From: Bispira polyomma
Taxonomy: Eukaryota
Direction of reading: 5' to 3'
Assembly: GCA_965649765.1 (NCBI GenBank)
Contig: OZ287755.1
Span: 40,486,001 to 40,550,000 of the forward strand
DNA length: 64,000 bases
Below are positions 6,301 to 41,953 of this stretch, in pieces. Positions within the stretch are counted from its first letter, which is position 1, and each line of letters starts with the position of its first letter. The position numbers and the translations under genes were made by a program. The notes beneath the pieces were generated by a model. The model saw only the letters and a list, made by a program, of their open reading frames with translations. It was not told where the DNA came from and did no database searches.

Positions 6301-7155
6301 ACCTTTAGCTATTTTTCCGGTAATAGTGGTCAAAGTCTCTATTGATATCCACAAATCTAGGATTTTACTGTATTAATTTAATGTACATAATACAACATAA
6401 GTACATAATACAAGACATTTTATTTTCATTTATACACCAAAAAAAGTATTAACATTTCTTTAGCGGTGGTGTAAATTGTGTTCTGGAAGCTGGGTTTGAT
6501 TTAAACTAGATAGTAATGTTGTATCGGGCATCACATTATATGATGATTGCAATGTGAAAGTGTTATACAATCGCTGGTCTTTAACTATTTACAGGGCTTC
6601 AGCACTGGTTCCTCTACCATTAAATTTGGCCGTCGTGATATGACCTAAGCTGTTGAAGGGGGCGTAAAACCCAACTAAATTTAAATGCAAACTACTTAAG
6701 AAGTAACCACATGTTACAGTTAATCATATAAATACATAGTTAATTTTCTGTAGTGGCTTGGCTGACTGGTGCATATCTATAATTATGATACAATAAGATA
6801 TAGCTATAAATACATAAATATCATTCTGTTGTGGTTGCAGTTTTTCCTCCCCAACATATTCAAGAAACCTGTGGATGATGCCAAAATTCAGGAGGTCACA
6901 GAAAACCTGACCAAGACTCTGGATTTTTTGGAGAACAACTTTCTGCAGAAAAACCCCTTTCTTGCAGGCAGTGAAATTTCCCTGGCTGACCTAATGGCTT
7001 ACTGTGAGATCATGCAGCCTGTGGCAGAGGGATTTGACGTTAAAAAGGGAAGGCCTAAGCTAGCTGCCTGGATGGAAAAGGTCAAGGGCAAGCTTAGCCC
7101 AGTCGTTACTGAAGCTCACGAGGCTATTTTAGAACTATGTAAGAGCAAAAAATGA
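3316..7155 (+). CDS. GSTT: Glutathione S-transferase, theta class, 224 aa; coding exons 3316-3430, 4792-4879, 5794-5950, 6841-7155
   Basis: All introns are GT-AG and phase-compatible (115+88+157+315=675 nt). Translation MPALKFYNDMLSQPVRAVWILMK...GQVPAIEDEGFILTESQAILTYL...RARVDEYMSWH...FLAGSEISLADLMAYCEIMQP has the theta-class catalytic Ser motif (SQPxR), cis-Pro VP, ES and N-cap SLAD motifs. AATAAA at ~7195. Confidence 0.93.
3559..3885 (+). mobile_element. 3' fragment of a non-LTR retrotransposon ORF2 inside a GST intron
   Basis: RSCKIYGPDSIEYEEHFVFNCNVYDNNR resembles the C-terminal C..C...E.E.HF...C..Y...R zinc-knuckle region of LINE ORF2 proteins. Confidence 0.6.
4428..4640 (+). mobile_element. 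SINE family B copy
   Basis: B-box-like gggtttgaatcc and the shared gcactggtttcc...gtcgtgatata...ttgaaag core. Confidence 0.55.
5040..5450 (-). mobile_element. L2/CR1-type LINE 3' end fragment
   Basis: Minus strand reads like an ORF2 tail (FLITAPMLRNSLPVEFRELEPLSDFRNKNLNP) followed by a 3' UTR similar to those at 18200-18560, 59150-59620 and 59660-59900. Confidence 0.55.
6460..6690 (+). mobile_element. SINE family B copy
   Basis: cagcactggttcctctaccattaaatttggccgtcgtgatatgacctaagctgttgaag...gcgtaaaaccc matches 42920-43115. Confidence 0.6.
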
Positions 7156-9899: not shown

Positions 9900-12800
9900 C
9901 GTCCACGACCTTAAATCTATGAGGGTACCAGTCTGTTGCTAACACAGGTATGAAAGTTAAGTCAATAAACAAACCCCATGTCGTTAAAAAATAATACAGG
10001 TAATTGAATCTGAGTGGGCGGCGCCCACAAGACAATAGAAAATTAGTAAATAAGTCCAGTTTAAATTTAGCCACAGACAAGTATTTTACTTTACATGATT
10101 TCACAAACGGTGATTTATGATACATATGGAAACACACACGAGGACTATTTTTGTTTTTTAGTGTTTTCTCCTCTCTGACAACCTCATGCTTGATTATCCC
10201 TCGGGCTGAGTATAAAGGGACGAAAATCATTTCTAGTTTTGTATAATTTAGTATATTCTTAGACGAGATATAATCAAGTTTTGGAGTGGTCAGACGGGAA
10301 GGCTGAGGGCTGTTTATTCTTATTTCAGTGACTATATGCACATATTCAAAAATTAAAACATTAAAGGGATTTAAAAAATGCCACAATCAAAGGGATTGTG
10401 TAAGAAGTGTGGCAACAGAGACATCCCCCCTACTGGAAAGAAATGCACCAGGGAAAGTCATGTAAAGACAGATACAGAAGTTGTGTTAGAAGATGCTCGT
10501 TCAGTGAAGGACACTCCTATTAAAAAACACGGGCGGGACACTCGGAACGGAAAGAAGTCGGCGGCGGATGCAGGCGGTGACGACCAGGACATCCAGAAGC
10601 AGATTCTCCAGTAACTCCAGATTGTGAACTCAAGGCTGGATCCTGTAGAAGGCCAAGTGGCTGAATCCAGGACTAGACGCACAAAGGGACATAGGACTAG
10701 TGGAAAGTTAAGTAGAACTCTTTTAAATCAAAAATGTAGTACTCGTTAAAACACTTCAGATTCTGATTCCTCAGATGAGGAGCAAGTATTGCCAAATCTA
10801 TCTACTTTGAGCAGTTCTGCTTCCTTTCAGCGTCGTGTCGATAATAGATTAAGGGAATTGGAAAAAGACAGTCAAAGTGCAGGTAATGATAGTTAAAGTA
10901 AAATAAAATCACAAAGAGGGGGCGTGGTTGACGTGGTAGTAAAAAATAAAGTGACCTGGCCTCAAGAGGCAATTCTAGGGGGGTTACTAGAAACAGAATG
11001 TCTTATGACCAGTTGTCCCTTACCCAATGGGTTCAAGGTTTCTGTAAGGATATTATGGATGACTCAGACAGTGATAAAAAAGACAAAAATGGTGGCCTAC
11101 ATGTCGGATCTTATGGAGGATGCAACGGATTTCACATGGCAAGGGGCAAAAGCAGCTCATGCTGTCTTGCTATGTGAAATGGAAAGAGGCACCCTCATAT
11201 GGGATGACAGTAATCGGGTCGATAGAATTCGCAGGGCTCATGCCCAGAAACATACTAGCAATACTTTTGGCAATGGCAAAAATTGGGAGAAAAAATCAGA
11301 TCACAGTGGCAAAAAACATTGGTTTTGCAAATTTTGAAACAGGGATGTGTCAACACACAAAAGACCACAAAATTGGTGGCAAATTGCATAGACACATTTG
11401 TGCTCACTGTCTGGCTACAGGTAGGGTGTTGTCTCATCCGGAAAAAGAATGTCTTTTCGCTAAGAAGAATGGTCAGCAGGCAAAAAACAAGTAAGCAGCT
11501 GTCTTCATAATATTAGTACAGAAGGCAGCTGGGGTCAAGATAACAAAGGCCACTTAGAAGTCAGTCATAGTAAGGACACAGCTAATGTTTTAGTGGTTCG
11601 AAAAAAGCAGCAAATGATGGTGTGGGATATATAGTTCCAAAGACTAAAAATGACATGTATAGAGAAAAAGAACAATTTGTTGGTTGCAATGAGACTACAG
11701 AATTGACTAGTCTCAAGGGTTTTAGTGTACAAAATGGTAAACACTCTCAGTACAGAGCCAAGTTTAATGACAAGTATTTTTACAGTAGTAAAGTCAAAAA
11801 ACAAGATGTTGACAGTCTATTAAAAGATGTGATGTGTACATTTAGGGCTGTAAGTTGTGATGTCAGAGCTAGATCATATGCTAGTCTAGTGAAAACCAGA
11901 CTTAAGGGAAACAAACGACACACGACTAACACTGAAATGCAGCACAAAAAGTAAGACATGCTAGGGTAGAAATATGTAGTGATAGTACTAGAACATACAA
12001 AGACAAGGTGAAACATGATGTGGTAAAGGGGGACGTGAGGGAAATCCCTCCCTTTAAATCAATTGAATCCAAGAGTGTCAAAGGCTTAGTGGACAAGCAG
12101 GAAACAAAACTAATTTACGACATAAATGGTGTTAAGGACAAGTTCATTCACTCGATACTATTTAACAATGGTAAAATGAAGTCAAAACAACCTGAGGTGC
12201 AATGTGACACGTTTGATCAGTTTAAACGACAAACTGAATTCCAATTTGGCTTTATTCCTCTGAATGACCTCACACTCCCTGACAGCACTGACAGTAATAA
12301 CAGTAGCATTAAATGTCCAATTAAGAGACACAATGAAGTGAAAAAAGTGGGCCGGCCTAACTTTATGGGGGCTCGTATACCCGTCGAGTCACAATTGAAC
12401 ACAGACACACAGAACAATGGAGAGAAATGCTTAATGGTTTTTGGGATAGCCAACTTATTCAGTTAATAGAATTTGGTTTTCCTCTGGGCTTTAATAGACA
12501 CTGCCAACTTAAGTGTGATGTGGACAATCATAAATCGGCTCAGGAGTATGCCAAGGATGTCAGGGTATACATTAATGAGGAAAAAAGCCATGGAGCCTTA
12601 GTAGGTCCTTTTCAAAACAATCCAATTAAGAATGGGCATAGCTCTCCATTCATGACAAGACATAAACCAAACTCTGACAATAGGCGAGTTATAACTGACT
12701 TAAGTTGGCCCAGGGGTTTTTTAGTCAATGCAGGAGTGGACAAAGACAGCTACTTAGGTGCTGACTTTAACTTGAGTTTTCCAACTATTGACGATTTGAC

Positions 12801-15100
12801 TAGGAAACTTATCAAACTGGGCAGAGGGGCGCATATATACAAGTCAGACGTCAGTCGCGCTTTCTGTCACCTAAAAATAGATCCCATGGATTATGACTTG
12901 CTGGGCTTGAATTGGGAAGGTACTTACATTGATACTTGTCTCCCCTTTGGGAGTCGCCATGAAAACCAGTTTTTCCAACATGTCAGTGAAGCAGTGCGTT
13001 ATATCATGCGTCAACGTGGATTTAGCGTCACAAATTACATCAACGATTTTTTGGGGTATGGGACGCCCACAGTAGCAAAACGCTCATTTGACTGCTTGTG
13101 TGAGATAATGCAATAATTAGGACTGACTATCAGTCAGAAGAAACTGGTATACCCAAATACACAAGCAGTGTGTCTAGGGATATTGGTAGACACAGTAAAA
13201 GGAACTGTAGCCATACCAGAAGAAAAACTACTAGAAATTAAGTCCACAGTTAAGCAGTGGCAAACAAAAAAATTGTACAAAAAGACAACTACAATCACTT
13301 TTGGGATAGTTGTTGTACATACATAAATGTGTAAAGCCGGCGAGATGCTTTCTGAATCGTATGCTAAAAGTACTGAGACGTATTGTAAACCCCAATAAAG
13401 TTGAATTAACTGAAGATTTCAAATGTGACTTAAGATGGTTTCACAAATTTCTCCCTGATTACAACGGGGTATCTATGTATGATCATAGAAGGGTGGATCA
13501 CACTCTAGAACTAGATGCTTGTTTACAGGGGCTAGGGGGTAGATGGAAAACCCTGGTATATCACTTGGCTATCCCTCTAAATTTTCAAAATTTGCAAATA
13601 GCCCATTTGGAAATGGTAAACATTCTGGTGGCCTTAAAATTATATGGAACTCATTGGCAGGGCACCAAAGTCCTCATAAAATGTGATAATCAGGCGGTAG
13701 TTCATGGTCTCAGTTCAGGCAGAGCCAAAGACCCTTACTTAGCAGCCTGCGCCAGAAATGTGTGGTATCTGGCAGCCACAGCAGACATTGACTTACAATA
13801 TGTGCATGTACTAGGTGAGGACAATAGGACTGCGGACTTGCTATCAATAGACAAATTCAGTGAATAATATAGTAGAATTAAATACACTGGTGCACAGTCT
13901 GGTATGGCTAGACACATCGATCAAGCTGACACAAATAGATGATACATTGTAAATAATAATAAAACTTATGTTATAAGTCAACTTAAAATGGATACTATGC
14001 TTTGTTTTGTGGGATCTGAAGCACAAAAAGCGTTACAGGCGGGAGTTAGTAGCAGCCTGCATACAGCATTCAGACCCAAGACAAGAAAATGTTATCAAAG
14101 TCTTTTTAGAACATTCATAGGATTTTGTTTATGTGCTGGGTTAGTATTAGAAGCCCTGGAAATAAAAAACGTCATGTCCGTTTTAGAATATTTGGTACTA
14201 AATAAAGTATCTGTCCACATGGTGGCTAATTATGTCCCAGCGTTAAAAGCTATGAGTATAGTGTATGATCTTCCATTTGAAATTTTTGATCACCCCAAAA
14301 TAAAGTACTTCATAAAATCTCTGAAAATTAATAGAACACATGTGATAGTAAAGAGAAATATATTGAATGTGAACACATTGGAGCAGTTGATAAGGCACTG
14401 TGGCCATGTCAACAACTCACAGGTATACAAGGCTATATTCCTCACAGGTTTCTTTGGTTTTTTCAGGCTCTCGAATTTGGCCCCACACTCCGTAAGAGAG
14501 TTTGACACTTCACGTCATTTTACGGGGGGATGGGTTCTTTAAAAAAGCACTGTTAAAATTCTTCTAAAATGGTCCAAAACTCTACAGAATAGAGACAAAG
14601 TTCAAATAATAGCTATGCCTTGACTAAAACCTTCACTTCTTTGCCCTTACATGGTTTTCAGAAACCTGTTCAAATTATATAGCCCAGGAAAAAATGACCC
14701 TTTATTTTAGTGCTTAACAGCCACTGGCAGGCAGGTGGTCACAGACTCACAGGTAAGAAAGACTTTGGCAAGACTTAACGAAAAATTGGGATGTCCTTCT
14801 AACTTCTACATGTTTCACGCTTTTCGACGTTCAGGTGCCACTCTGGCCTATCAGGCGAAGGTTCATATACAGCAAATTAAAGAGCATGGCACCTGGACGT
14901 CGGACTGTGTTTGGACATATATTCAGGCAAATACTAATAACACAGTGGTGGCCACCACCTTCCAAAGACTGCTAGATGTCTAGTGCTACTATCCCTACAT
15001 CTTGGGTTTGAGGCTTTCTTCATGTTTGATATATAAAATAGTATAAAGCAGTGTAAAAGTTGAGGTCAACTGAGGATAGAAACATTAAATTCACAATCCA
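9900..15100 (+). mobile_element. Decayed Ngaro/DIRS-type tyrosine-recombinase retrotransposon (element E1); ends approximate
   Basis: Gag-like ORF1 pieces (10378-11494; C-terminal CKF..GMC..HK..HICAHC..HPEKEC zinc finger), RT pieces (12008-13300; KSDVSRAF, LPFG, YINDF), RNase H (13310-13867; LELDAC..GLGG, IKCDNQAVV, HVLGEDNRTADLLS), YR (13988-14983; FRLSN, HAFRRSGA, HGTW..Y). Many stops and frameshifts; no split repeats located. Confidence 0.9.
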
Positions 15101-15779
15101 CACTTGTGGATTAAGTTAACCTTAAATTGGCACAGTTTAAGTTAACGCTGGTGACCACTTAAGTTAGGGTCACCTTAAACTTCTTCATTCAGGTGTTTTT
15201 CGTTAGTTTAAGAGCACCTTAAACTGAAATTCAAAATTGTATTTTAAGTCAAAACTTAAAGTGAAATTAAGTTGAAGAATAAACTTAAAGTGATAATTAT
15301 ACATATGACCTTAGCTTAAATATGAATGTTGTAACCTTTTTATTATTGTATACTTTAACCAGAAATGTACATAGTTAGTAGTATAGAACTTATATTTTAC
15401 ACAATTTTACATATATTTTATAAAATAAAAATATATATACCCTCATAGATTTCTTATTCTTGACTTGGAAGTGATAGGGACTGAAACCTAATATTTGGCT
15501 TGACTCAAGTGAAAGCTATGTAACTCCTGTTCCAAAATAACCTGTAATTGTGACTATTAAATTAAATGCATATTATCACTGATAAACAACTATACAAATG
15601 TATGCATTATAGAAATAGTAATGGTATATATTTCTATAAACTGAGCACATACCATTATAATACAAGGAGAATACAACTTAAACAAAAGTGCTCTAGAATG
15701 TTTTGTTAATAATACAGATTTTATATTTGAGCTGTTACTTTTTGTCACAAATAAGAATAGTTGTTATATATCTCATTTT

Positions 15780-16420
15780 CTAAATCAAACAAAAGGAAAA
15801 TTACTACCAGCATACTACTGTGTCCGGGACCAATGACTGTAATAAAAAATGTAACCCAGAACACTACATACACCAACTTCTGTCAGTTGTTAGCATTGAA
15901 TATCAATGGCCTCTAATATGGCATTTGTACAGAAAACTGTATGTGTTTTACTCTTTGTATGTGCTATTTTTTCTGTATTGAAAACAGTGAATTCTTAAGG
16001 TAAAATATACATATTTGATACTATAGCTTATATAAACTTGATTAGGATAAATATGTGATTTCAAGTTTTATAATAACACACTTACAATAATGGTTGTCAC
16101 AAATGCAAATAGTAGTTATATATCTAATTTGCCAAATCAAACAAAAGGAAAATTACTACCAGCATACTACTGTGTCCGGGACCAATGACTGCAATAAAAA
16201 ATGTAACCAAGAACACTACATACACCATCTTCTGTCAGTTGTTAGCATTGAATATCAATGGCCTCTAATATGGCATTTGTACAGAAAACTGTATGTGTTT
16301 TACTCTTTGTATGTGCTATTTCTTCTGTATTAAAAAGAGTGAATTCTCAAGGTAAGATCTACATATTTGATATTATAGCTTATGTAAACTTGATTAGGAT
16401 AATTATGTGATTATAAATTT
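15780..16420 (+). repeat. 352-bp-period tandem duplication containing the signal-peptide exon of the integrin-beta-like gene
   Basis: aaatcaaacaaaaggaaaattactaccagc... occurs at ~15782 and ~16134; ATG at 15906 and 16258; both copies end in G|GTAA. Confidence 0.92.
15906..15999 (+). pseudogene. Nonsense-bearing duplicate of the signal-peptide exon
   Basis: Same 94-nt exon as 16258-16351, but codon 31 is TAA (15996-15998) instead of CAA. Confidence 0.85.
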
Positions 16421-18785
16421 TGTATTGGCACACTCACAATAATGCTTTCCACGAAATAATGCATGTCTGTAAACTTTTATGTGTCCACACTTCAGAAGTT
16501 AATTATTCTGCTTATTGTGTTTTTGTTTACAAGGAGGTCGAGGATGTAGGCGGCGAACAACCTGTGCCTCCTGTACAGACAATGAGAGTGGATGTAACTG
16601 GTGCCAGCCACAGGTACCGTCTCATGTGACCTATAACAAACAATATTACATTGTACTGATACACTATACTGTCTTATGTCAGTTCTAAAAAACAATATTA
16701 CCAAGGATCTTTAGCCTGCCACTGGGGATACGACCCAGTGACAGAGGACCGCCATTTTAAGTGGTCCCCTGAGCCACTAAGCAAATTTGTGTACACATCT
16801 TGCCAAAGGATGTTGTACCAATGAAACTGGCGGCCGGTACCAGGAATAGAACCCAGGCAGAATTGAATGTATTCATATTTTAAATTTGTTCAAAAACAGA
16901 TGAGACAATATGACAGGCATAAGCCTTAAGCAGGTCTAGAGGCCCACAAACCTGTATCATGTCTCACAGTCTTATCACCAGTTGACATCATATTGTACAT
17001 TGTAGGATCTGACACGTGACGGGTTTTGTGGTTCTCCCTCTAAAATCAGCCGGAGATGTGACGGTGAAGCCAGTATAGGTGGGAATTACTTCAAAGTAAG
17101 TCACACAGGTTGATGAAATTTTATAAAATTCTTAGTTTACAAGAATGACAAAACATTGCCTTTTTCCAGGGTAATTGAACTTGACATTTTGTTGCATGCC
17201 TTGCCAACCAAATAGATCAATGCCGCAACCTCAATGACCTTTCCATGCAAATTATACAAACCTATTGTATGTATTCAGTCTAAAAATTATCTTCAAGGAA
17301 ATAAATTGTTTTTAGCTCTACCTATTTAAGCCTTGGTTTGCATACTTGATGTTGAGGATTACAGACAATAAATAATTTAAAGACTAAAAAGTGACAGTGA
17401 TTTCTAAAGAAAAGATGTTGGGACACACAAAATGAGTTCCCTTAAATCCCCACATGAGCTGTAATGAATTGTTTCTTCTTCTCCAACAGGAAGAGGCTAG
17501 TGTGAAATGCAATTCTATTGGTACATACGAATGTGGACGCTGTAATTGTGATGAAGGCTATTATGGCAAGTTCTGTGAGTGTGACGCCTGGTCCTCCAGT
17601 GAAGACAGCTGTAGAATGTAAGCATGAAAATATAGTATGTCTTGTAGTCATGGTAATTATCTCTAACTATTTTGCATTTTGGAAGAAAGATATTGCAAGG
17701 AAAATACAATTTTTTTTTGTATTGTATTAGCATACAGTGGACATTTGACATAGTGTGTTGTTACTCAAAGGTTTCAAGGATCAAAGTTGTGTGAAGGCAA
17801 TGGGGAGTGTGTTTGCGGGATGTGCGACTGTCACCCAATACACCCATATACTCTGCAAAGGTTTAGTGGCCAGTTCTGTGAATGCAATGACTATTCATGC
17901 GACTTCTTTGCCGGCATGTTATGTGGAGGTAGGCTTTCCTGTGGTCTAATTATGTTTGATTTATGTTTTAACAATAGATAATATAATTAAATAGTTGTAA
18001 TATATTAATGAACAACTAGATTTTACCAACATTTTAAACATTACACAAACTAACGTGTGTTCCACAGACGATAACTAAACATTGCCTTACTAAGAATACA
18101 ACATTATAATTATATGTAGACATTTAATCATTCCAGCAAACTTTAGGTACTATATTAACTGATAAGATATTGCCTGCCAAGAATACAAAAACAAGATTTA
18201 CAGTGTTTTCCGTACTCTTTATCCTCACTTTTTAAATCTAGTAGACTTTCCATAAAACTATCACTCTATCTCTTTAACCCAACCAAACAAAACATTGGTT
18301 GGCCCTGCTTTGCTGTTGCAGCTCCTGTTGAAGGAAACTGACTCCCACACACTGTCAAATCACAGGATAAAATCACAGGTTTCAGAAACCATCTAAAAAC
18401 TTACCTTTTTTAGACTTGCCTACCCCTCCTTAGTCATCCCTTCCTTCTAGTAACAACCTTACGGTTGCCCCCGGACTTTTCCTTTTTGTATATTAGTGCC
18501 TTAGAGGATGTCCTCATCAATTTGGCGCTTTATAAATGTTTCAATTATAAATGTTTTAATTATTATTATGAATATCAAGGTGCAGATCGTGGAGTGTGTT
18601 CCTGTGGACAGTGCATATGTTCACCTGGATACACTGGGAGTGCATGTGAGTGTACTATGTCTCAGGAGAAGTGTATGGCATCCAATGGACGTGTATGTAA
18701 TGACAGAGGGCACTGTCAATGTGACGTCTGTGTCTGTGACCAGTATGCCAAGGGACCAACATGTGAGGAACTTGTGGATGGTTGA
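16258..18785 (+). CDS. Predicted secreted integrin-beta-like protein, 251 aa (signal peptide - PSI - I-EGF1-4); exons 16258-16351, 16534-16613, 17006-17095, 17490-17617, 17771-17928, 18580-18785
   Basis: All five introns are GT-AG with matching phases (1,0,0,2,1); 94+80+90+128+158+206=756 nt, open throughout. Signal peptide MASNMAFVQKTVCVLLFVCAISSVLKRVNSQ; PSI CRRRTTCASCTDNESGCNWC...FC...RC; I-EGF repeats GTYECGRCNCDEGYYGKFCEC, CEGNGECVCGMCDC...FSGQFCECNDYSC, CGGADRGVCSCGQCIC..GYTGSACEC, CNDRGHCQCDVCVC...GPTCE. AATAAA at 18965. Confidence 0.88.
16700..16858 (-). mobile_element. SINE family A fragment in intron 2 of the integrin-like gene
   Basis: Reverse complement of 2545-2705. Confidence 0.75.
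18200..18560 (+). mobile_element. L2/CR1-type LINE 3' end in intron 5
   Basis: Reads ...IGWPCFAVAAP...GFRNHLKTYLF, then ggcgctttataaatg...tattattat tail. Confidence 0.65.
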
Positions 18786-19742
18786 ACTGTTTTAAGGGAT
18801 GTATATCAACTAAAAGTCCTTTATATGGCCAAATATATAGATTATGATAATACACAAATCATCTGATATATATTGTAATTTGTAACTGAAGCTACACAAA
18901 AGTGCGCATTTAAGAACACAACATGGGGTATTTGTAGATATAATGTTACACAATTTTAGAAAGAAATAAAAAAAATGGCTCATTCCATCCACCTTTGCAT
19001 TGTACAAAGAAGAGTCTTCTTTTGGCCAAAAAAATAACAATTATAGCAACAGCTGTCAAAGTTTTTGCTGTGCAGTCATTTATTGTGTGAATAAACTTAG
19101 ATGTGTATCATGATATATTGGACTCAAGCTGCTTAAAGGGATGAATATACCTATCCGATTTTGCCTCTGAATCTGTCATCCAACGTCCATCTCTGTCATC
19201 CGAAAAAAATCAAAAGATATTGAAACAGAGAAGTAGCATACACTTGGCTGAAGTCACCTCAGATTCGAAAAGGATGCACCATCCAGACTCCACTAGTGGA
19301 ACCAGGAAGCACCTACCATTTTCCCTTACTACAGTGGTTGGGATGGCCAAACCTCACCCTAGCCCCACTTCACCCTCATCGTTTAAGTCCATTACTAGAT
19401 TCTGCCCCACCCCTTTGCTAAAGTGGCCCAGAGTAGCTCTATCCACCCTTTTCATAGTGCACTAATGAGACCCACTCTGGCTTCCTCACAGTCTTCCTTT
19501 CCACGGTATTGCACTGGTGGGCTCTAGGTCCTTTCTGCACAGCAGGATCCTACCTCGTTGTACACTAAGTATAATACTCATTATTGTAAAAGTTCCTTCT
19601 TGATGCATAGTTGGCTCAGCCTCCTTCTTTAACAGTAGCTATGGCTACGGGACATGATGTGTCTTGTAATATTGACTTAGACATGGTCTTGACCTCTTAA
19701 GCTTCAGAAACCTGAATTTAGTTAGTGTGATATGGTCTTTGG

Positions 19743-22100
19743 TGAAGCCCCAGTCACACTGCAGGTACGATCTTTTAACGACTGCCTCGGACCTAAAAAT
19801 CAGGATAGTTTGTTACAGGTCTGTGATAATACCTAATAATTTAAACAAAGGTATTTAATGTTTGTGGATGATATTTATACTTCTTACGATCGTTTCAAAG
19901 TCCTCACTTCCCAGCCAAAGTGGACCCTGGGCTCCTTTAGCTTCCAGGAGGCTCATCTCACTCATCTCAATGTCCCAGCCAAACAAGCCCCAACAGTGAG
20001 AGGGTCATATTCTGCCAGTGGTTGGGGTTGGAGGCCTACAAGCTGTCCAACAAGCTGTGGATGGGCTTCATGACCAATGTATTCAACATCATCATGAGAT
20101 ACCATCTGCAGGATGTGCAACATCCACGGCAACAGCAACAACCACATCCATATCGACAATAACAGCAACAATAGCATGAACAGCAACAACGGCAGCAACA
20201 GCCACAGTCACAGCAACAGCCGAAATCACCGCCACAACAACTACAGCAACAACAACATCAACAACACAGCAACAGTAAAAACCACATCAACAGTCACGGC
20301 AACAACCACACCTGTATCATCAACATCAGCCACAGCAACAGCCACAGTCACGGCCACAGCAACAACCACAGTAACTCCCATATCAACAGCAACAGCAGCA
20401 ACAGCCACATCAGCAAAAGCAACAGTCACAGCAACTGTAACAGCCACTTCAGCAACCACGGCAACAGCAAAAAACCACATCAACAGCCACGGCAGCAACC
20501 GCATCCGTATCAACAACAACAGCAACATCAACAGCAAAAGCAACAATGACAGCCACAGCCACATCAACAGCCACAATCACAGCCACAAGAACAACTACAG
20601 CAACCGCCACAGCAACAGCCATATGAACAGCCACAATAATAGCTACCGCAACAGCCACACCAACAATAGCAACAGCCACATCAGCAGCAACAACAACAGA
20701 CGCAACAACAATTACAACAGTGACAACAACATCAGCAGCAACAGCGAAAATCAACAATAGCAACAGCCACAGCAACAAACATTGGTATATCACTTTACAA
20801 CAACAACAATTACAAAATTATATGGACACAAATATAAATACATCACCCATACCCCTCCAGAAAACTCAGTGGATGTATGCACTCCACTGTGTGCTATTTA
20901 TCTTCAATGATCATCAATAATCTTCAAAACATTGGACATGGACGTGCTTTACAACTTGTCTATAGTGCTCTTAAAACCATGTGACACAGCGCCCATTTTG
21001 CGAGGACATAAATGATTCCTTACGACCATTTTGGAACGTCTTGGTAGGAGCCACACATATTTTTGGGGTTTTCTTGATGGGCGACGATGGTCCATATCGC
21101 ATCTCTGTAGGTTGCACCAACTTTGTGGGATATACAGGGACTCCCTATACGATGGTCGTCGACTTCCAAGGACCAGTATTCTAATATCTGCAACCAGTTG
21201 AAGATCATCGTGTCACTAGCCATGACTGGTCACCAATTGTCAAAGACTGGTTGCAGAAAATTGCCCATAGTCCCTACCAGTTGCACCTCTTGTGAAAACC
21301 CCTCCTGGGTCAGACTATAAATAGCTTGTCTGATGCACTAATTGATCAGTATGCATCAAGTTTTCAAGCAATAAACATATCAATATATATCAATATCTAC
21401 TATTTTAAGATGGTGCTGTGGAGGTGGCCAGAGGTTTCCAGGCCAGCAATGCTAGAGGTGTCTAGGCTCAGGCCAGATGTGTTCAGCCCACTGAGGCCTC
21501 GATTCTGACCTGTGACAGGTTGAGTTAGTGGTGACTAAAACTGCTGTGTCTGTGGTGGTGTGCAGAAGATGGACCCTGTGGCTATAGCTGGTGGAGCCGA
21601 CGCAGGCCTGATGGCCACTGGCTGTAATAAAGCTGGTGTGGCTATTGTCTTATAGCCTGGACTGAAAAGTGTCTTGCATTAAAATAACCAGCCCACTGGG
21701 TTTTAGATAAATTTGTTGCCTCCAGCTTAATTGACAAAAAGATTATCTGGGGTTGTTTGTCTCAATAACCAACTTCAACTGCAGTTGGTGCGTGAGTTGG
21801 TTTTCGGAAAAATATTTCGCAATCTGTATTATTACATCACCCGCCCGCCTCCCACTGGGTTTCGCTGGTCATGGTCCGCCAGTCTGAGGCTGGCTAATGT
21901 TTCTTGCCTGATTGGATCCCGGTGGAGTGGGGCCTGGCCAACTGGATGTGGTCTGTTAGTCACTTTGATGGCCTGATGAGGAGGCAATGCTGGTCAGCTC
22001 ATCGTCCTCCTGATCCAGATCATCGCCCTTGCCCATCAGTACTTTTCTTATTAAACTGATTGGAAAGAGGGCTCTCACTTCAATCTAATAAGGAATATGA
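19743..22100. mobile_element. Probable decayed PIF/Harbinger derivative
   Basis: Terminus-like aagccccagtcacactg at 19744; subterminal acga/tcgt repeats at 20990-21290; 21280-21410 is homologous to 47570-47740, which directly precedes Harbinger transposase remnants. Confidence 0.4.
20110..20830. repeat. Degenerate (CAA/CAG/CCA)n triplet low-complexity tract
   Basis: Direct reading; it produces spurious poly-N/T/A/V/L ORFs in several frames. Confidence 0.9.
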
Positions 22101-27551: not shown

Positions 27552-28532
27552 TTAGTTGTATTTAATCTCTACTCTATCTCTCTGAACCTTCTTTTGCAAT
27601 GATTTTCTATAATAGCAACAGCAGCAGAATGTCTGTCTCCAAACCTTTTGAATTTCTGTCAACCGTAAAGCATAAATCAATGGGTCACAAATGCTGTTCA
27701 GGTACACAATACATGGTATTATCCTTTTCAACCAAAAAACCTGATTCTCATATTCAATGCTAGAGGCTGGCCTGTACAGTTGAAAGTATATCTCAACAAC
27801 TACAGGTGGACACCAGCACAGCATAAAAGAAACCAGGTTAAATATTGTTGTAAACAGTGCTCTGTTGTTGCTCCTGGACTGCTGGTTTTGTGAGTGGTCA
27901 AGTCTTTGTTGTTTACGCACCTCACAGTAAATAAAAGAATAGGTTGTGATCATTAGCAAACAGCAAATTATAACAAATGGGACACGAAATGTGTCTTTCA
28001 TATCAATGTTAATCTGGTATTCTGTTGCATTGCCCTGGTATCCATTGTAAAACATCCACTCATCTTTTACAATAACTGATGAATTTGGTATACTACGACC
28101 TATATACACTAATACAACAGGAATTGTCCATATAATGAACAGTCTGCAAAAAATACATCGACAGCGGGTCCAATTGTCATAATATAATGGTTTCATAATA
28201 GCCATGTAGTGTTCTGCAGCCAAAAGAATTAGATTGCATAGAATGACATACAAAATATATTCATAGCTCAAATTGTAAAGTCGATATCGATTCACCAATC
28301 TTTCTGGCAACATATTTTCCATTATATTTAAGTAATAAACCAACACAAAAGACAATGGTAGCAAAACATCTGCTAATGTAAGGCTTTTTACTAGTGCAAA
28401 GTAAGATCTTCGAGGGCTTTTCATTTTATATAGAACAATCAATAACAGTATATTGAGAATTATACCTGTAATAATGACCACCACAAACAGTATCACAAGG
28501 ATAAAGATCAATATTTCCATTACAAGTGCCAT
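27552..28532 (-). CDS. Rhodopsin-class (class A) orphan GPCR, paralogue 1, 326 aa
   Basis: Seven hydrophobic segments; TM1 N, TM2 LTLAD, TM3 EHY(MAIMKPLYY), TM4 W, TM6 CWCP, TM7 NSICDPLIY, C-terminal Cys cluster. Confidence 0.9.
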   Translation of the reverse strand: MALVMEILIFILVILFVVVIITGIILNILLLIVLYKMKSPRRSYFALVKSLTLADVLLPLSFVLVYYLNIMENMLPERLVNRYRLYNLSYEYILYVILCNLILLAAEHYMAIMKPLYYDNWTRCRCIFCRLFIIWTIPVVLVYIGRSIPNSSVIVKDEWMFYNGYQGNATEYQINIDMKDTFRVPFVIICCLLMITTYSFIYCEVRKQQRLDHSQNQQSRSNNRALFTTIFNLVSFMLCWCPPVVVEIYFQLYRPASSIEYENQVFWLKRIIPCIVYLNSICDPLIYALRLTEIQKVWRQTFCCCCYYRKSLQKKVQRDRVEIKYN

Positions 28533-30736: not shown

Positions 30737-33700
30737 CATAGCAAGTCCACCCCAGGGGACTGCTAGTTCAGTCCAACCTCCTTTTTCTATCACACTACCT
30801 TAATCCCTAGCGAATGCAATAGCATTATCCAACTTTCTGTCCATCTGGGCCTTGTCCAATCACAGCATTAGCTATTAGTGACCCCTAAGCTAGGATAGCT
30901 ATCCTCCATATTGAATTTGTGTTTTCACCTGTGAACAGGACATTTAGAAAAACTGAAATTTTAACCACGTATTTACACTGAATTGGTTTTATTTATATTT
31001 TACTTCTTTTTATTAACTGACGTGGTACTGGAACTAGTGATTGTTGTGTGAAATGGGGAAAACAAAAGCAACTCCTGTGTTAAGCAGCAAGAAACGGACC
31101 ACAAAGACAACTTCAACTAGTACAGCCAAGAAAAGGGGTACTGGTCAGGTAACTACTACTAATACTCACGATCAATCAGAAATACATAGAACAGTCATTG
31201 CCGACACTGCGTGTCCTCTTATTGATTCTCAGTTACTGAACAGTTCAAATGGATCATCTAGCCAAGCCGGGCTCTCATCTCAGGCCGTACCCCAGTCACA
31301 AGTCGAGTCACAAAGCATGTCCGAGGTTCTTTCCATTCTGCGTGGTCTGGAGACCTCCAACGCTAACATAACCCGGCGATTGCAACTTGTAGAGGACAAA
31401 CAGACAGTTACACCCGCTAATTCTCCATTACACACCATGAGGGATGGTACGGTGGTCCAACAGAGACACGAGGGTTATTCGTTACCTCTTCCCCCTCCCA
31501 GGTACAACGGGGTCGCGCAGCCGCTGGCTCAACCTATGATGCAACCACCAACAGGTCAGGGTTACAACACAGATGGCATTGTCCCCAGTCTCGATGCATT
31601 AAGATCTTTTCCAAACGTGCAGGCGGCCGTTACCAGGCAGCTGGCTGACTACGAAGCCTTGGCCCAGAGGGGTCTAGTCCAGGGTAAGCACTCAATCAGG
31701 TAGAAGTCTGGTCGTTATAACTCCACAGATATTACTTTAGCTGATCCCCAACTCAGATGGTCTAACGAAGGTTGGGGTGGGGGATCGACTCGTCGAAGGC
31801 CAGTCTTTGACGACCTCACGTTGCCGCAGTGGGCGGCTGGCCAGCTGGCCAACTCGCTACAAGTAAGTGATCCGGCAACAATGAAAGCTATGGTGAACCA
31901 AGTGGTACACGCACTACGGGATGCAGCCACACTTCCGTGGCCTGCTGTCAGGACAGCCTGGGCTGTCAGTATACATGAGATCGAGGAAGGCAGGCTGTCC
32001 TGGCAGGACAACACTCAGTGGGCACTGAATCGCATCAGTGCCTCCCAGATGGCTATGGTAGGCAACAATGGCAGTAACTTGGCTAACGGGGCTTCTTCAG
32101 ATAGTAAATCCATCTGTAAGCTGTTTAATAATGGCAAGTGTACTCACAAGGCGGATCATGGCAATTATCGTCATGTATGTTGGTATTGTAATAAGACATT
32201 AGGAAAGGACGCGTCGCACCCAGAGTTCAAATGCTTTAAAGCGAATGTAAGTAAACAGCCAGACAAACAACAAGGTAACATCTAGGGCCACGATTCACAA
32301 CCAGTTGGACGAACATTAGGTAGTGATAAGGGTAATTCAATGATGAACGGTAACAGTAAATTTGTAAAAGAGTTTAATATAAAGGACAAAAACAGTGAAT
32401 TAGGTTATTGCGACAGAGGCATGTCTGAAATTAATACAATTGTGCAAAGTTCCAATAGTAATGATTATCAGCAGATGATAATGTCAGATAGTACAAGGTT
32501 TGTCAATAATGTATTCAACACTGATATAAAGGTGAACTTTGTTGATAATGATGTCTTTAATAATTTTGCAGTTTCAGTAGATGCTGGCGACAACTACCAG
32601 TATGAAACCAAGAATGTAAATGAATGTATTCAATTTCAGAGCAGGACCCAGTCGGGTCACCATAGATGGGACAGGAGCACTGAGGCCTGCATTTCAAATG
32701 GGAGCAGTCACTATGCTAATTCACCAGCTTGGAACAAAGAGGCACATACGTGTCAGGTATCAGTTATCAATTGGAAAACTTTTTGTGGGGAAATTCAAAA
32801 TTTGGCTCCAATTGTTTACATTAGGGATAGGGATGGAAAATTCTCAGGTTATTTCCACATGTTTTATGACGTGACTGCTGCCAAGTGTGTATATGCTCGT
32901 GTTGAATTTCCACCTAGCCAAAACCTTTGTATTATTCAAACCTTTCAAACCATAATCCAGGTTCAGGCTGTTTCTTTAAATACTACCAGTAATACTAATG
33001 TGGAAACTCATAACCAGGCTGTGATCAAGCAAGCTGCTGATACATTTTATTATTTCGAAAGAGATAATGCCTGTTTGAAGCAGTTGGGTTTTGATTATAC
33101 TGAATACATGACCAGGTTAGTAGATGCACTTATTAGTGACAGTGAAGACGAAACACCTGACAATTGCCATAAGTCAGACAATTGTGCAGACTTGTGAAAT
33201 GTAAGTACACAAAAACCAAGTGAGACTGTAAACAGTCTGATTTGTGATCAAATATACATGAACTCGTCAAGCAATGAATTCACTCAAATGGTTGATAGTG
33301 TTCGAGCAAACAAGGATTTGTACAAAGAAATTAAGGACTTTAATGACCCCGAGAAAACCATGGGTTTCTTGGCACTTTCCTCAACAGCATTCACATTCAT
33401 AGGTCCTGACAAACCTGTTAAGAGAATTAAAACAGTAGAAGACATGCTGCAAGTGGCTTCTGTTAGCAGAGACACTGCACTTCCCAATTATAGACAAGCA
33501 AGGGTTCCCCTGGTGTCAGGACTTAATCCAGATGCATGGGATGAAGTTTTCCAAGATTATCCTGACCCATGGCCTGTGGAGGTCTTCAGCTGTATGGACC
33601 TACCTACAGAAGACCTCCCAAGCTGCTTCAGTGGTGCCTCTCACCTTTGCTGGGGCTATCCCTCCTTCTTAGTTGGGCTTGGGGCTTAAAATTCCATCCT

Positions 33701-36875: not shown

Positions 36876-37841
36876 CTAAAGGGAAGAAGGGATAGAAGAA
36901 GCAAAGGCAAGGGGAATAGTTGCAGCAGCCTGAGGAGTTTTCTGAAGATAAACCCAGACTGCTGAAGATCTCCATAACCCGTGAGACATAATGTTTTGGA
37001 GAGAAACGTTATTGTTAAAAGCATAGGTAGCTCCTGACCTTCTAAATGTGTGAAAACTATGACCTCTGTGTGGTATACCTATATGTTGTAAGACCAAGGT
37101 TAAAGAATGTCTGATATGAGTCTCCACAATGGGAACATGAGGACAACTAGCAGTAACAAAAAGTGGACACTCTAAAGGCAAAGGCCTTGAATCTAACAAT
37201 TTATGAAGTGCCCTGACTGGGCACAAATGTATATTCTGCAGTTGGGGTAATTGAATTACATGATGTTCTGATCTATTTTGTAAGTTCTTAGCCCATTTAA
37301 GTATTAAATGAGCTCCAGGATGGCCAAACACAACATCCTTTCTAAGGAAATGACGCGTTCGGTCAAATTTATTTCTGGAATGCGGAGCAATGTTTGAGAT
37401 TCTAAGGAATCCAAAGTATGCCACCAGAAATATTGCCCTATATAATGGGGGATCCCCCAGAATGTCACATGCTTTAGATATCTGTTGTAAATGTGTAATA
37501 TCAAAAATACCCCTAGGTTGAGGTCTAAAAGTAGAAGAATGTGACAAACTCCTAATAAACATGGCAACTGAAGGATTTTCGAAAATATTTTGGTTCCAAT
37601 ATAGTTTGTTAGCTGTGAACTTTAGAGCTGATAAATGGTTGGTTAAAACATTAGGGGAAGAGCCGTTTTGCACCAGGTACTCCAAAAATGCTATAACAGA
37701 ATTAGTTGAAATGTCCTGTATGCCAACAAATATAAGAAAAGCAACGAAAGTTCTAAACTGTTGGTTGTATGTAGCAGTAGTCTTTGGACGTAATGCTGAA
37801 GAGACCCGTTTCCATGCAGAATTCATAAGGTGTTGAGTCAC
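36876..37841 (-). CDS. Tyrosine recombinase of E3
   Basis: Catalytic residues FLRISN (R), HTFRR (HxxR), HGLW and VWVY (Y). ORF opens at GTG; probably reached by splicing (see findings). Confidence 0.93.
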   Translation of the reverse strand: MTQHLMNSAWKRVSSALRPKTTATYNQQFRTFVAFLIFVGIQDISTNSVIAFLEYLVQNGSSPNVLTNHLSALKFTANKLYWNQNIFENPSVAMFIRSLSHSSTFRPQPRGIFDITHLQQISKACDILGDPPLYRAIFLVAYFGFLRISNIAPHSRNKFDRTRHFLRKDVVFGHPGAHLILKWAKNLQNRSEHHVIQLPQLQNIHLCPVRALHKLLDSRPLPLECPLFVTASCPHVPIVETHIRHSLTLVLQHIGIPHRGHSFHTFRRSGATYAFNNNVSLQNIMSHGLWRSSAVWVYLQKTPQAAATIPLAFASSIPSSL

Positions 37842-37858
37842 GGTGTTGGTTCCTACAA

Positions 37859-40468: not shown

Positions 40469-40639
40469 GCATTATTTATCATTATGAATAATTTGCAAAT
40501 GGCTAAGCAAAATGTCTTCATCGTCATAGTTTACAATGCCATTATCTTTTAAATCTATTGACTTAGATACGTTAGTTTTTACAGTTCTGTCCCTACAACT
40601 CACTGCTAATGTTCCTTTCACTGGTAGTCGGTCAATGTC

Positions 40640-41953
40640 CTAACTATGCTTATTTTCTAACTGTTTTGTGGCATTGGCCTTGTAGCACTTAAACTCAGGA
40701 TGAGGCGAATCTTTATTCAAAATGGTAGCACAATGCCAACAGGCATGCTTGTAATTTCCATGATCATTCTTCTGTGAACATTTCCCTGAATTAAACAACT
40801 TGCAAATCGTGGATCTCCCCGTATATGCACCAGCCGAACCTGTGCTGTGAGATGAATTAGCCATCACTGTCTGGGACGCGCTAATTCGGTTGAGCGACCA
40901 CTGAGTAGTGTTGCCCCAGGTCAGGCGACCTTCCTCGACCTCCTGCATGCTTGTCGCCCAAGCCGTGCGGACGACCTCCCAGGGGAGCGACGAAGCATCC
41001 TTCAGCGAGAGTATCACTTGCTGGATCATATCCCGTAACAACTGGTTGTCACTTATCAGTAAAGCATTACACAACTGCCCTGCAGCCCAATGTGGAAGGG
41101 AAAGCTCATCAAACGTTGGACGCTTACGTGAAGACCCCCCACTCTAACCTTCGTTAGCCCATTTCATGCGCGGATCTGTGGCCGCTGTGTCGGTATTGTT
41201 ATAACGTCCCGACTTCTGGCGCGAATTAACCTTACCTTGGTTAAAGATAGCTTGTGCCCTGACTTCATACTCAGCCAGCCGCTGATTCACTAAGGCTTGC
41301 ACCTCGGGCATCGACCTCAAGACGTCCGTCCTAGGAACAATTCCGTCACGTGTGTATTCAGCTGAGGTTGAAGCTGTAGTAGTGGGCCCGACCAAATGTC
41401 CATAACCGCTGGTAGGCTGAACATAAACTGGTGGAAGCGCTGTGCTGGATACGGACGCAGGCTGCACGACTGAAGCAGTCGAGGCGGTTATATTTCCATA
41501 ACCGTTGGTAGGCTGCACCACTGGTGAAGGTACGTAAGCCGGTTGAAACGCTGTAGTGGACACGGCAGTTGTCTGTACCGGTGTAAGCCCCCTAGCTTCT
41601 ATCTGGTCCAACCGACGGGCTATGTCAGCGTTGGATTGCTCCATTCGATTCAGCATTGTCAATATTGCAACGTTATCACTGGTAGTATTAAGCGAAGTAG
41701 CGGGTTGCAGCATCTGTGGCACCGGGTGTTGTAAATCCACCGAGGTGGCCATCGGGAAGGTGGAACCTCCCGCTTGAGGTGAATTTTGATGAGAGCAGAG
41801 AGCTTGCTCGGACGGAACCCGTAGGTCTCCTATTATACTTTCATTCATGTCAGTACTATAAGCTACATTACCCTTTGTACCCTTCACAGTAGACTTCTTC
41901 TGTCGTCTCGACTTGGGTGCTGCTTTCGCCGGTGTTTTCTTAGCTCGTCCCAT
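40640..41953 (-). pseudogene. Gag-like ORF1 of E3 interrupted by a single in-frame TAG (41144-41146)
   Basis: The two ORF-track pieces are in the same frame; E2 has TGG (W) at the aligned codon (SNEGWGGG); C-terminal CKLFNSGKC...HACWHC...HPEFKC zinc finger. Confidence 0.88.

What the first reader, a model, noticed from the sequence alone, without database searches (positions are those of the whole stretch)
16258..18785. Secreted 'headless, tailless' integrin-beta: PSI domain joined straight to four I-EGF modules
Seen: an intact six-exon ORF with signal peptide, integrin-type PSI domain and I-EGF1-4, ending PTCEELVDG* with a poly(A) signal ~180 nt later. Established: integrin beta chains have hybrid and beta-I (vWA, ligand-binding) domains between PSI and I-EGF1, then a beta-tail, TM helix and NPxY tail; vertebrate ITGBL1 is an EGF-repeat-only relative. 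The 394-nt intron 17096-17489 is far too short to hide the ~370 missing residues. Inference: exon loss produced a soluble integrin 'knee/leg' protein that could be an integrin-alpha decoy or modulator, a matrix protein, or a PSI-based thiol-exchange protein. Clean phases and intact Cys spacing argue against a pseudogene.
Basis: partly seen in the sequence, partly recalled or inferred. Interest (0 to 1): 0.8.

Follow-up and report, generated by a model that had tools for sequence, protein, structure and literature searches.

The report
Secreted stalk-only integrin-beta paralogue
This invertebrate (probably annelid) genome holds a small intact gene, made by duplicating the integrin-beta gene and losing its ligand-binding head and membrane anchor, that should give a secreted cysteine-rich 'leg' protein like vertebrate ITGBL1. 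It is a lineage-specific variant of a known kind, and its expression is unproven.

Summary
There are six GT-AG exons (16258-18785, + strand) that give a 251-aa open frame. It has a signal-peptide-like start, a seven-cysteine PSI segment and I-EGF1-4, and it ends CEELVDG*.

- **Origin:** Exon boundaries and phases match the genome's single canonical integrin-beta gene on C12. Our exons 1-3 are its exons 1-3, and our exons 4-6 are its three I-EGF exons. About ten exons (hybrid and beta-I domains, ~370 aa) are missing, and the frame stops about where the canonical exon ends.
- **Nothing further downstream:** No beta-I, beta-tail or TM exon exists in the window or on this chromosome.
- **Copies:** The genome has exactly three copies of a ~5-kb duplicated unit. 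The window copy is intact. One copy has lost a cysteine. The copy 22 kb from the canonical gene is a pseudogene.
- **Selection:** dN/dS is about 0.35, and exons are more conserved than introns, so the window copy looks constrained.
- **Expression:** No RNA data exist, so expression is untested.
- **Two partnerless cysteines:** The lost exon carried the partners of one PSI cysteine and one I-EGF1 cysteine.
- **Novelty:** Stand-alone integrin stalks are known (ITGBL1). Head-less relatives are annotated in Capitella and molluscs.

I read this as a new, independently derived variant. Its function as an integrin modulator is inferred only.

The parts
16258..16351 (+). Exon 1: ATG plus a signal-peptide-like N-terminus (hydrophobic core TVCVLLFVCAISSVL), phase-1 donor
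   Evidence: 91.5% identical in both paralogues. No SignalP tool was available, so the signal peptide is judged from the sequence only.
16534..16613 (+). Exon 2: first half of the PSI domain. It has 5 Cys and both CXXC motifs (C-A-S-C and C-N-W-C).
   Evidence: Pfam PSI E=8e-4 and PSI_integrin E=5e-3. tblastn to canonical exon 2, with the same start and end phases.
17006..17095 (+). Exon 3: second half of the PSI domain (2 Cys) plus a short linker. It ends ...NYFK, where canonical exon 3 ends ...NYTQ.
   Evidence: Phase 0 at both ends, as in the canonical gene.
17096..17489 (+). Intron 3 (394 nt): the fusion point where about ten canonical exons (hybrid and beta-I domains, ~370 aa) are missing
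   Evidence: It is colinear in all three copies. There are no PF00362 matches on this chromosome.
17490..17617 (+). Exon 4: I-EGF1, without its first cysteine, which lay in the lost exon together with the PSI-linking Cys. It also holds the start of I-EGF2.
   Evidence: Pfam I-EGF_1 34.5 bits. 62% identical to the canonical exon with identical boundaries. PDB beta-1/beta-2 I-EGF1.
17771..17928 (+). Exon 5: I-EGF2 core and the start of I-EGF3. It is 158 nt, the same length as the canonical exon.
   Evidence: Pfam EGF_integrin 41.2 bits. 57% identical to the canonical exon.
18580..18785 (+). Exon 6 (terminal): the rest of I-EGF3, a complete I-EGF4 (8 Cys), the tail EELVDG, and the stop TGA at 18783-18785
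   Evidence: The stop and tail are kept in all three copies. The canonical exon ends 4 codons after the same Cys (CEDCP|gtaagt).
18965..18970 (+). First AATAAA after the stop (a second is at 19090-19095): a possible poly(A) signal
   Evidence: This is weak evidence, because the hexamer is common in this window.
15742..16041 (+). Window-specific tandem duplicate (352-nt period, 94% identical) of the promoter and exon-1 region. The upstream exon-1 copy (15906-15998) carries TAA at codon 31.
   Evidence: Paralogues B and C have a single copy.
15474..20785 (+). Extent of the ~5-kb segmentally duplicated unit shared with copy C (C12:47.984-47.990 Mb). Copy B (C8:66.296-66.300 Mb) matches to about 19628.

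Best explanation
The locus is an intact, lineage-specific gene for a secreted, stand-alone integrin-beta 'leg'. The product has a signal peptide, a PSI domain and I-EGF1-4, about 221 mature residues and 36 cysteines.

**How it arose.** It came from a DNA-level partial duplication of the genome's single canonical integrin-beta gene. The duplicate kept exons 1-3 and the three I-EGF exons. It lost the roughly ten exons for the hybrid and beta-I domains through a phase-0/phase-0 internal deletion. It is truncated where the canonical I-EGF4 exon ends, so the frame runs six codons past the last I-EGF4 cysteine to a stop. The ~5-kb unit was then copied twice. The window copy is the one still under purifying selection.

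**What is shown and what is inferred.**
- Shown: the anatomy, the derivation, the copy number, the state of each copy, and dN/dS below 1.
- Inferred: secretion and function.

**Most likely function, by analogy with vertebrate ITGBL1 (a secreted integrin-stalk protein reported to inhibit integrin activation).** The free leg binds integrin ectodomains and modulates their activation. Likely binding surfaces are those that normally pack against the beta leg in the bent state. The loss of the C-x-C-x-C exon leaves the PSI cysteine equivalent to beta-3 C13 (first CXXC motif) and the I-EGF1 cysteine equivalent to C457 without their partners. They either pair with each other or provide reactive thiols.
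For: - **Gene model:**
- **Domains:**
- **Canonical gene:** mapped on C12 with all domains.
- **Shared exon structure:** identical exon boundaries and phases for e2, e3, e4, e5 and e6. The lost exon ends ...CECDCERPEVE|.
- **Copies:** exactly three in 1.035 Gb. Copy C lies 22 kb from the canonical gene's 5' end and is dead, with 5 stops and several indels. Copy B has Cys174Arg and a 1-bp deletion at the e5 donor; T|GTGAGG four bases upstream would keep the frame.
- **Selection:**
  - W-B dN/dS is 0.355, Fisher p=1e-4.
  - Changes unique to W are 15 synonymous and 20 non-synonymous (omega about 0.34, p=0.002). None hits a Cys, and none is a stop or indel.
  - C has 12 synonymous and 34 non-synonymous changes plus stops.
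  - W-B identity is 91.5% in exons and 82.9% in introns.
- **No hidden exons:** no beta-tail, TM or beta-I coding potential anywhere in the window or on C8.
- **Tree of the I-EGF1-4 region:** W+B group with the own canonical gene and its closest orthologue (87/89).
- **Literature:** ITGBL1 as a secreted integrin inhibitor and a 'stand-alone integrin stalk' (PMC8921176). PSI CXXC motifs, the C13-C435 bond and the I-EGF disulfide pattern (PMC12383024).
- **Autonomous folding:** beta-2 leg fragments have been solved on their own (PDB 2p26, 2p28, 1l3y, listed).
Against: - No RNA run holds the locus. The three runs that hold it are DNA contigs, so transcription, the splice junctions and the 3' end are unverified.
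- Two of three copies are decaying, so the family may be on its way out.
- No protein with this exact architecture, and no close orthologue, turned up in the protein libraries.
- The 'W branch' in the three-copy comparison is unrooted and includes ancestral history.
- Two cysteines lack their canonical partners, which could also mean misfolding.
- The function is analogy only. ITGBL1 lacks a PSI domain and has ten repeats.
Confidence: 0.6

Rival explanations
1. The locus is a non-functional relic. A partial duplicate of the integrin-beta gene happens still to have an open frame in this copy, but it is not expressed or has no role. The low dN/dS would reflect past constraint or chance.
For: - Copy C is a clear pseudogene. 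Copy B has lost a structural Cys and its e5 donor register.
- There is no RNA evidence.
- No orthologue was found.
- The duplicated unit carries only about 430 bp of upstream sequence.
- The window copy has a disruptive-looking tandem duplication of promoter and exon 1, with a stop in the upstream copy.
Against: - The W lineage has 35 substitutions but no stop, no indel, no lost splice site and no lost Cys. Copy C acquired about 9 disabling changes in 46 substitutions. At that rate about 7 would be expected in W, giving P(0) of roughly 0.001 as a rough estimate.
- Omega is about 0.34 with p=0.002.
- Exons are clearly more conserved than introns between W and B.
Confidence: 0.3
2. The model is incomplete. 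The real transcript uses the donor-like T|GTGAGG at 18762/18763, or another site, to reach further exons (beta-tail, TM), or it includes unrecognised head exons. In that case the product would not be head-less and tail-less.
For: GTGAGG is a good donor consensus and is conserved in all three copies. Splicing has not been observed directly.
Against: - The same TGTGAGGA lies inside the canonical exon, where the exon continues to CCA|gtaagt. It is conserved because it encodes Cys-Glu.
- Pfam beta-tail, cytoplasmic and beta-I models hit only the C12 gene.
- tblastn and a locally built tail/TM HMM (hmmsearch --max) find nothing in all 64 kb.
- The introns are 153-651 nt.
- Identity between W and copy C (a pseudogene) downstream of the stop is 88-89%, no higher than the W-C exon identity of 88.7%. 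The W-B downstream alignment is broken by insertions in B.
- The duplicated unit ends about 2 kb downstream.
Confidence: 0.05

Closest known systems
[quoted passage not shown]
   Same: A secreted protein made only of integrin-beta stalk modules, with no beta-I head, no TM and no cytoplasmic tail. It was described as a 'stand-alone integrin stalk' and reported to be a secreted inhibitor of integrin activation (PMC8921176).
   Different: As I recall the family description, ITGBL1 has ten I-EGF-type repeats and no PSI domain. Our gene has a PSI domain plus exactly I-EGF1-4, colinear exon by exon with its own genome's canonical beta gene. It groups with that gene in the tree. That makes it an independent, much younger derivation and not an ITGBL1 orthologue.
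Canonical integrin beta subunit of the same genome (C12:47.912-47.962 Mb)
   Same: The signal and PSI exons and the three I-EGF exons share boundaries, phases and 52-62% identity (30% in PSI). The cysteine spacing is the same.
   Different: Our gene lacks the hybrid, beta-I and beta-tail domains, the TM helix and the NPxY tail. It also lacks the C-x-C-x-C segment that ties PSI to I-EGF1.
Lophotrochozoan beta-I-less soluble 'integrin beta-like' proteins: Capitella teleta CAPTEDRAFT_224236, and Haliotis, Patella and Solemya 'integrin beta-like protein 1 / beta-PS-like'
   Same: PSI plus I-EGF modules with no beta-I domain and no TM. The Capitella gene is a compact 3.6-kb locus with no head exons within 10 kb.
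   Different: All of these keep the beta-tail domain. The mollusc proteins also keep a hybrid-like segment (read by eye from the sequences). Capitella lacks the I-EGF1 core. A clade of our gene with the Capitella gene is disfavoured but not rejected (p-AU 0.082). I found no paper on these proteins in my searches.

Membership tests
Integrin beta subunit (canonical) | beta-I (vWA-like, MIDAS) ligand-binding domain, Pfam PF00362 | tested here: not met
   PF00362 matches only the C12 gene in the whole genome. The introns are 153-651 nt.
Integrin beta subunit (canonical) | PSI domain followed by four I-EGF modules | tested here: met
   Seven PSI cysteines have canonical spacing. I-EGF2-4 have 8 Cys each and I-EGF1 has 5.
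Integrin beta subunit (canonical) | beta-tail domain, TM helix, cytoplasmic NPxY tail | tested here: not met
   PF07965 and PF08725 hit only C12. tblastn and a local HMM are negative over the whole window.
ITGBL1 / TIED | Signal peptide, no TM, built only of integrin-stalk modules | tested here: met
   This is at sequence level only; secretion itself is not tested.
ITGBL1 / TIED | Ten tandem I-EGF-type repeats and no PSI domain (feature recalled from the family description and the TIED name) | tested here: not met
   Four I-EGF modules and a PSI domain.
ITGBL1 / TIED | Common descent with vertebrate ITGBL1 | tested here: inconclusive
   Vertebrate ITGBL1 was not in my tree. Colinearity with, and grouping beside, the own canonical gene (87/89) argue for independent origin.
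Lophotrochozoan beta-I-less soluble integrin-beta-like proteins | PSI + I-EGF + beta-tail, with no beta-I and no TM | tested here: not met
   The beta-tail is absent. A clade with the Capitella member gives p-AU 0.082.

The most novel reading that the evidence does not exclude
This would be an independently evolved soluble integrin-beta leg, convergent with vertebrate ITGBL1. Losing the hybrid and beta-I exons would have freed the first CXXC cysteine of the PSI domain, so that the secreted protein acts as an extracellular thiol-exchange or decoy regulator of integrin activation in an annelid. It would be a natural experiment on what an isolated integrin 'knee' does.
Probability: 0.15. Interest if true: 0.6.

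Novelty: new variant of a known kind. Interest (0 to 1): 0.4.

Why it matters
If the gene is expressed, it would be a second, independent invention of a secreted integrin-stalk protein. It is young enough that every step of its birth can still be read in the genome: partial duplication next to the parent gene, in-frame loss of ten exons, 3' truncation, dispersal, and death of sister copies. It would also provide a minimal natural PSI-I-EGF1-4 module, useful for asking how free beta legs such as ITGBL1 act on integrins and whether the PSI CXXC cysteines are redox-active once their long-range partner is gone. If it is not expressed, it is simply a well-preserved gene fragment.

Tried and rejected
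- **RNA evidence.** All are DNA contigs that span introns, with no spliced joints and no variants.
- **Downstream or hidden exons.** Pfam genome scans, tblastn with five tail-bearing relatives, and a locally built tail and TM/cyto HMM run with --max were all negative.
- **Orthologue hunt.**
  - The exhaustive HMMER search with exon 6 gave 460 hits. No close orthologue turned up, and none of the hits I inspected has this architecture. The best was 61% identity, to a 95-aa ORF on a Logan contig whose DNA could not be fetched.
  - The word search with Capitella P0093 (177-562 aa range) did not return the window's protein or a close kin.
- **Literature.** Three searches found ITGBL1 papers and an integrin-disulfide review, but nothing on invertebrate head-less beta proteins.
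- **Earlier scan notes.** Nothing relevant beyond a hint that the genome is an annelid's. A word search for 'integrin' found no note.
- The joined six-exon protein has no reference, so it was never sent to any search, cluster look-up or fold tool. All searches were exon by exon. The joined frame was used only inside local scripts, for phase and cysteine bookkeeping, dN/dS and the leg-region tree. As a result there is no whole-protein Pfam/SignalP result and no AlphaFold model.
Full report
**1. Observation**

Reading window 15800-19400 and tracking the frames gives six exons on the + strand:
- 16258-16351
- 16534-16613
- 17006-17095
- 17490-17617
- 17771-17928
- 18580-18785

Every intron is GT-AG. 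The joined length is 756 nt, which gives 251 codons and a single terminal TGA. There are 38 cysteines, two of them in the hydrophobic N-terminus.

Pfam was run exon by exon, by reference:
- e2: PSI (E=8e-4) and PSI_integrin (E=5e-3). This is half a domain, so both are below the cut-off.
- e4: I-EGF_1 at 34.5 bits, above its 26.1 cut-off.
- e5: EGF_integrin at 41.2 bits (cut-off 27).
- e6: EGF_2 at 39.4 bits (cut-off 22.1).

Against PDB sequences, e6 aligns to integrin beta-3 residues 539-600 (the end of I-EGF3 through the last cysteine of I-EGF4). e4 aligns to the I-EGF1 of beta-1 and beta-2. AATAAA lies 180 nt after the stop (18965) and again at 19090. The hexamer is frequent in this 36.5% GC window, with 146 matches against 123 expected, so it carries little weight.

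**2. Where it comes from**

The window is C8:40486001-40550000 of a 1.035-Gb assembly in 75 contigs. Pfam models for the beta-I domain, the beta-tail and the cytoplasmic tail hit only one locus in the whole genome, C12:47.912-47.962 Mb on the minus strand.

I mapped that gene with its best database relative (P0101, 791 aa). It is a complete canonical integrin beta: PSI, hybrid, beta-I, I-EGF1-4, beta-tail, TM and cytoplasmic tail.

Compared exon by exon, the two genes relate as follows:
- Our e2 and e3 have the same start and end phases as canonical exons 2 and 3. The cysteine spacing matches: C-x5-C-x2-C-x6-C-x2-C, then two more.
- e3 ends ...NYFK| where the canonical exon ends ...NYTQ|.
- e4, e5 and e6 begin and end at the same codon positions as the three canonical I-EGF exons. 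Identity is 62%, 57% and 52%. e5 is 158 nt in both genes.

What is missing is the run of roughly ten exons between canonical exon 3 and the I-EGF1 exon, about 370 residues of hybrid and beta-I domain. Both flanking introns are phase 0, so the deletion keeps the frame.

At the 3' end the canonical exon reads ...TCEDCP|gtaagt and ours reads ...TCEELVDG-TGA. The frame therefore stops within two codons of where the ancestral exon ended. This fits a duplicate truncated in, or reading into, the old intron. TGTGAGGA also occurs inside the canonical exon, where it is not a splice donor.

**3. No hidden exons**

Three checks were negative:
- The five introns are 153-651 nt long.
- tblastn of five relatives that carry beta-tail domains found nothing in the window beyond exons 4-6.
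- HMMs that I built from 16 tail and TM/cytoplasmic regions, run with --max on every six-frame piece of the 64-kb window, gave no hit better than E=0.48.

**4. Copies and selection**

DNA searches of the whole genome find exactly three copies:
- W, the window copy.
- B, at C8:66.296-66.300 Mb on the minus strand.
- C, at C12:47.984-47.988 Mb on the plus strand. It lies 22 kb from the 5' end of the canonical gene, in divergent orientation.

They are segmental duplicates of a ~5-kb unit that includes the introns (W 15474 to about 20785). All three share the same six-exon structure, the same stop and the tail EEL[V/M/I]DG*. The internal deletion and the truncation therefore predate the copying.

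State of each copy:
- C is a pseudogene, with five in-frame stops and several frameshifting indels.
- B has a Cys-to-Arg change in I-EGF3 and a 1-bp deletion at the e5 donor. Using T|GTGAGG four bases upstream would keep its frame.
- W has no defect.

Selection measures:

| Measure | Result |
|---|---|
| W-B, Nei-Gojobori | dS 0.195, dN 0.069, ratio 0.355, Fisher p=1e-4 |
| Changes unique to W | 15 syn / 20 nonsyn, omega about 0.34, binomial p=0.002 |
| Changes unique to B | 9 syn / 18 nonsyn, omega about 0.51, p=0.08 |
| Changes unique to C | 12 syn / 34 nonsyn, omega about 0.72, not significant |
| W-B identity | exons 91.5%, introns 82.9% |
| W-C identity | exons 88.7%, introns 86.0% |

The changes unique to W are mostly conservative and none touches a cysteine. 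At copy C's rate of disabling changes, W's clean frame would be unlikely by chance (roughly 0.001, a rough figure). The caveat is that the three-copy tree is unrooted, so the 'W branch' includes shared history.

**5. Cysteine bookkeeping**

The mature protein has 36 cysteines: 7 in PSI, 5 in I-EGF1 and 8 each in I-EGF2, 3 and 4. I-EGF4 is complete, because its last cysteine is the C of ...PTCEE.

The lost exon ended ...CECDCERPEVE|. By the published beta-3 pattern, it carries the cysteine that bonds PSI C13 (the long-range C13-C435 bridge) and the first cysteine of I-EGF1. That pattern is from the review PMC12383024; the C437-C457 pairing is from my own knowledge of the beta-3 structure.

So Cys42 (the C13 equivalent and first residue of the C-A-S-C motif) and Cys103 (the C457 equivalent) have no canonical partner. 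Their lost partners were two residues apart, so the two could plausibly bond to each other and re-tie PSI to I-EGF1. Alternatively they could remain reactive. This is inference. It could be tested with a structure model or thiol mapping, neither of which I could run because the joined sequence has no reference.

**6. Relatives elsewhere**

An exhaustive HMMER search with exon 6 gave 460 hits at E<=0.001. No close orthologue turned up, and none of the hits I inspected has this architecture. The top scores are multi-repeat stalk proteins and canonical beta chains.

Several beta-I-less, TM-less relatives do exist:
- Capitella teleta CAPTEDRAFT_224236 (P0093, 321 aa) has PSI-like, I-EGF2-4 and beta-tail segments. 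I fetched its locus. It is a compact 3.6-kb gene with no head, hybrid or TM exons within 10 kb, so it is not a mis-model of a canonical gene.
- Haliotis, Patella and Solemya proteins are annotated 'integrin beta-like protein 1', 'beta-PS-like' or 'hypothetical protein'. Their precomputed Pfam domains list I-EGF and beta-tail models (PSI_integrin in two of the four) and no PF00362 beta-I. By eye, the sequences also have a PSI-like start and a hybrid-like segment.

In a maximum-likelihood tree of the I-EGF1-4 region, W+B group with the own canonical gene and its nearest orthologue P0101 (87/89), on a long stem. Forcing W+B together with the Capitella head-less protein costs 5 log-likelihood units (p-AU 0.082), which is disfavoured but not rejected. 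These trees used 23 and 14 rows. I left out the Haliotis asinina row because an extra repeat made its alignment ambiguous. I did not include vertebrate ITGBL1.

Together with copy C lying next to the canonical gene, the best reading is a local, lineage-specific origin. It would be independent of ITGBL1 and probably of the Capitella and mollusc genes. The grouping with Capitella, and a note from the scan about a glycerotoxin-like family in this genome, suggest the organism is an annelid. I did not verify this.

**7. How it probably works**

- Shown: the anatomy and the evolutionary constraint.
- Inferred: everything about function.

The protein equals the tip of the upper leg (PSI), the knee (I-EGF1/2) and the lower leg (I-EGF3/4) of a beta subunit, with neither ligand-binding head nor anchor. 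Such modules fold on their own; beta-2 leg fragments have been solved (2p26, 2p28, 1l3y, listed).

The closest functional precedent is ITGBL1/TIED, a 'stand-alone integrin stalk' reported to be secreted and to inhibit integrin activation (PMC8921176). I therefore favour a soluble modulator that binds integrin ectodomains at the surfaces normally facing the beta leg. I put about 0.3 on this given that the gene is functional. A redox role for the PSI CXXC motifs, both of which are conserved here, is a secondary possibility. Overall I put about 0.6 on 'real, functional secreted-leg gene', 0.3 on 'unexpressed relic' and 0.05 on 'incomplete model'.

**8. Novelty and limits**

The kind of protein, a secreted integrin-stalk-only protein, is known. 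This member is a new variant: PSI is retained, there are exactly I-EGF1-4, there is no tail, and it is recently and independently derived. My literature searches found no description of invertebrate head-less beta proteins.

The main weakness is the lack of any transcript evidence. The only public runs that hold the locus are genomic.

All database work was exon by exon, and the joined frame was used only in local scripts.

Noticed in passing
window 15742-16041 vs 16094-16393: A 352-nt tandem duplication (94% identical) of the upstream region plus exon 1, present only in the window copy. The upstream exon-1 copy (15906-15998) keeps the ATG and its donor but has TAA at codon 31. Transcripts starting there and splicing to exon 2 would be truncated.
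   Followed up: partly
window 16685-16881 (intron 2) and 18261-18548 (intron 5): Very high-copy interspersed repeats: word depth of thousands to 180,000 against about 20-200 elsewhere in the DNA runs. The intron-5 repeat ends 32 nt before the exon-6 acceptor. Both introns align colinearly in copies B and C, so the insertions probably predate the triplication.
   Followed up: partly
G000 C12:47951649-47951738 and 47950108-47950194; C12:47918341-47918520 and 47915321-47915506: The canonical integrin-beta gene has two tandem versions of one beta-I exon (both match P0101 residues 252-281). It also has two versions of the TM/cytoplasmic exon. This looks like mutually exclusive alternative exons, reminiscent of Drosophila myospheroid exon 4A/4B and vertebrate beta-1 tail variants.
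   Followed up: no
window 27552-28532 (-), 44272-45327 (-), 55890-56663 (-): A cluster of three intronless rhodopsin-family GPCR ORFs (Pfam 7tm_1, E=1.7e-20, 1.2e-19 and 3e-08). The third is truncated, with a frameshift-like end.
   Followed up: partly
window 10900-14550 (+), 31000-33700 (+), 36876-41953 (-): Tyrosine-recombinase (DIRS-like) retroelements and fragments. One ends about 1 kb upstream of the 5' edge (15474) of the duplicated integrin-leg unit.
   Followed up: no
window 20113-20785: A low-complexity array that is open in several frames, with no Pfam match. The same kind of array follows copy C on C12, so it belongs to the duplicated unit.
   Followed up: partly
window 6769-7155 (+): An ORF with a glutathione S-transferase C-terminal domain (Pfam GST_C, E=7.8e-10). 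It is probably one exon of a GST gene.
   Followed up: no
L032 (Capitella teleta KB296162.1, 130171-153750): Capitella has its own compact head-less, TM-less integrin-beta-like gene (PSI-like, I-EGF2-4, beta-tail), annotated only as a hypothetical protein. Together with the mollusc beta-I-less proteins, this suggests soluble integrin-beta derivatives are a recurrent and, as far as my searches show, unstudied theme in lophotrochozoans.
   Followed up: partly
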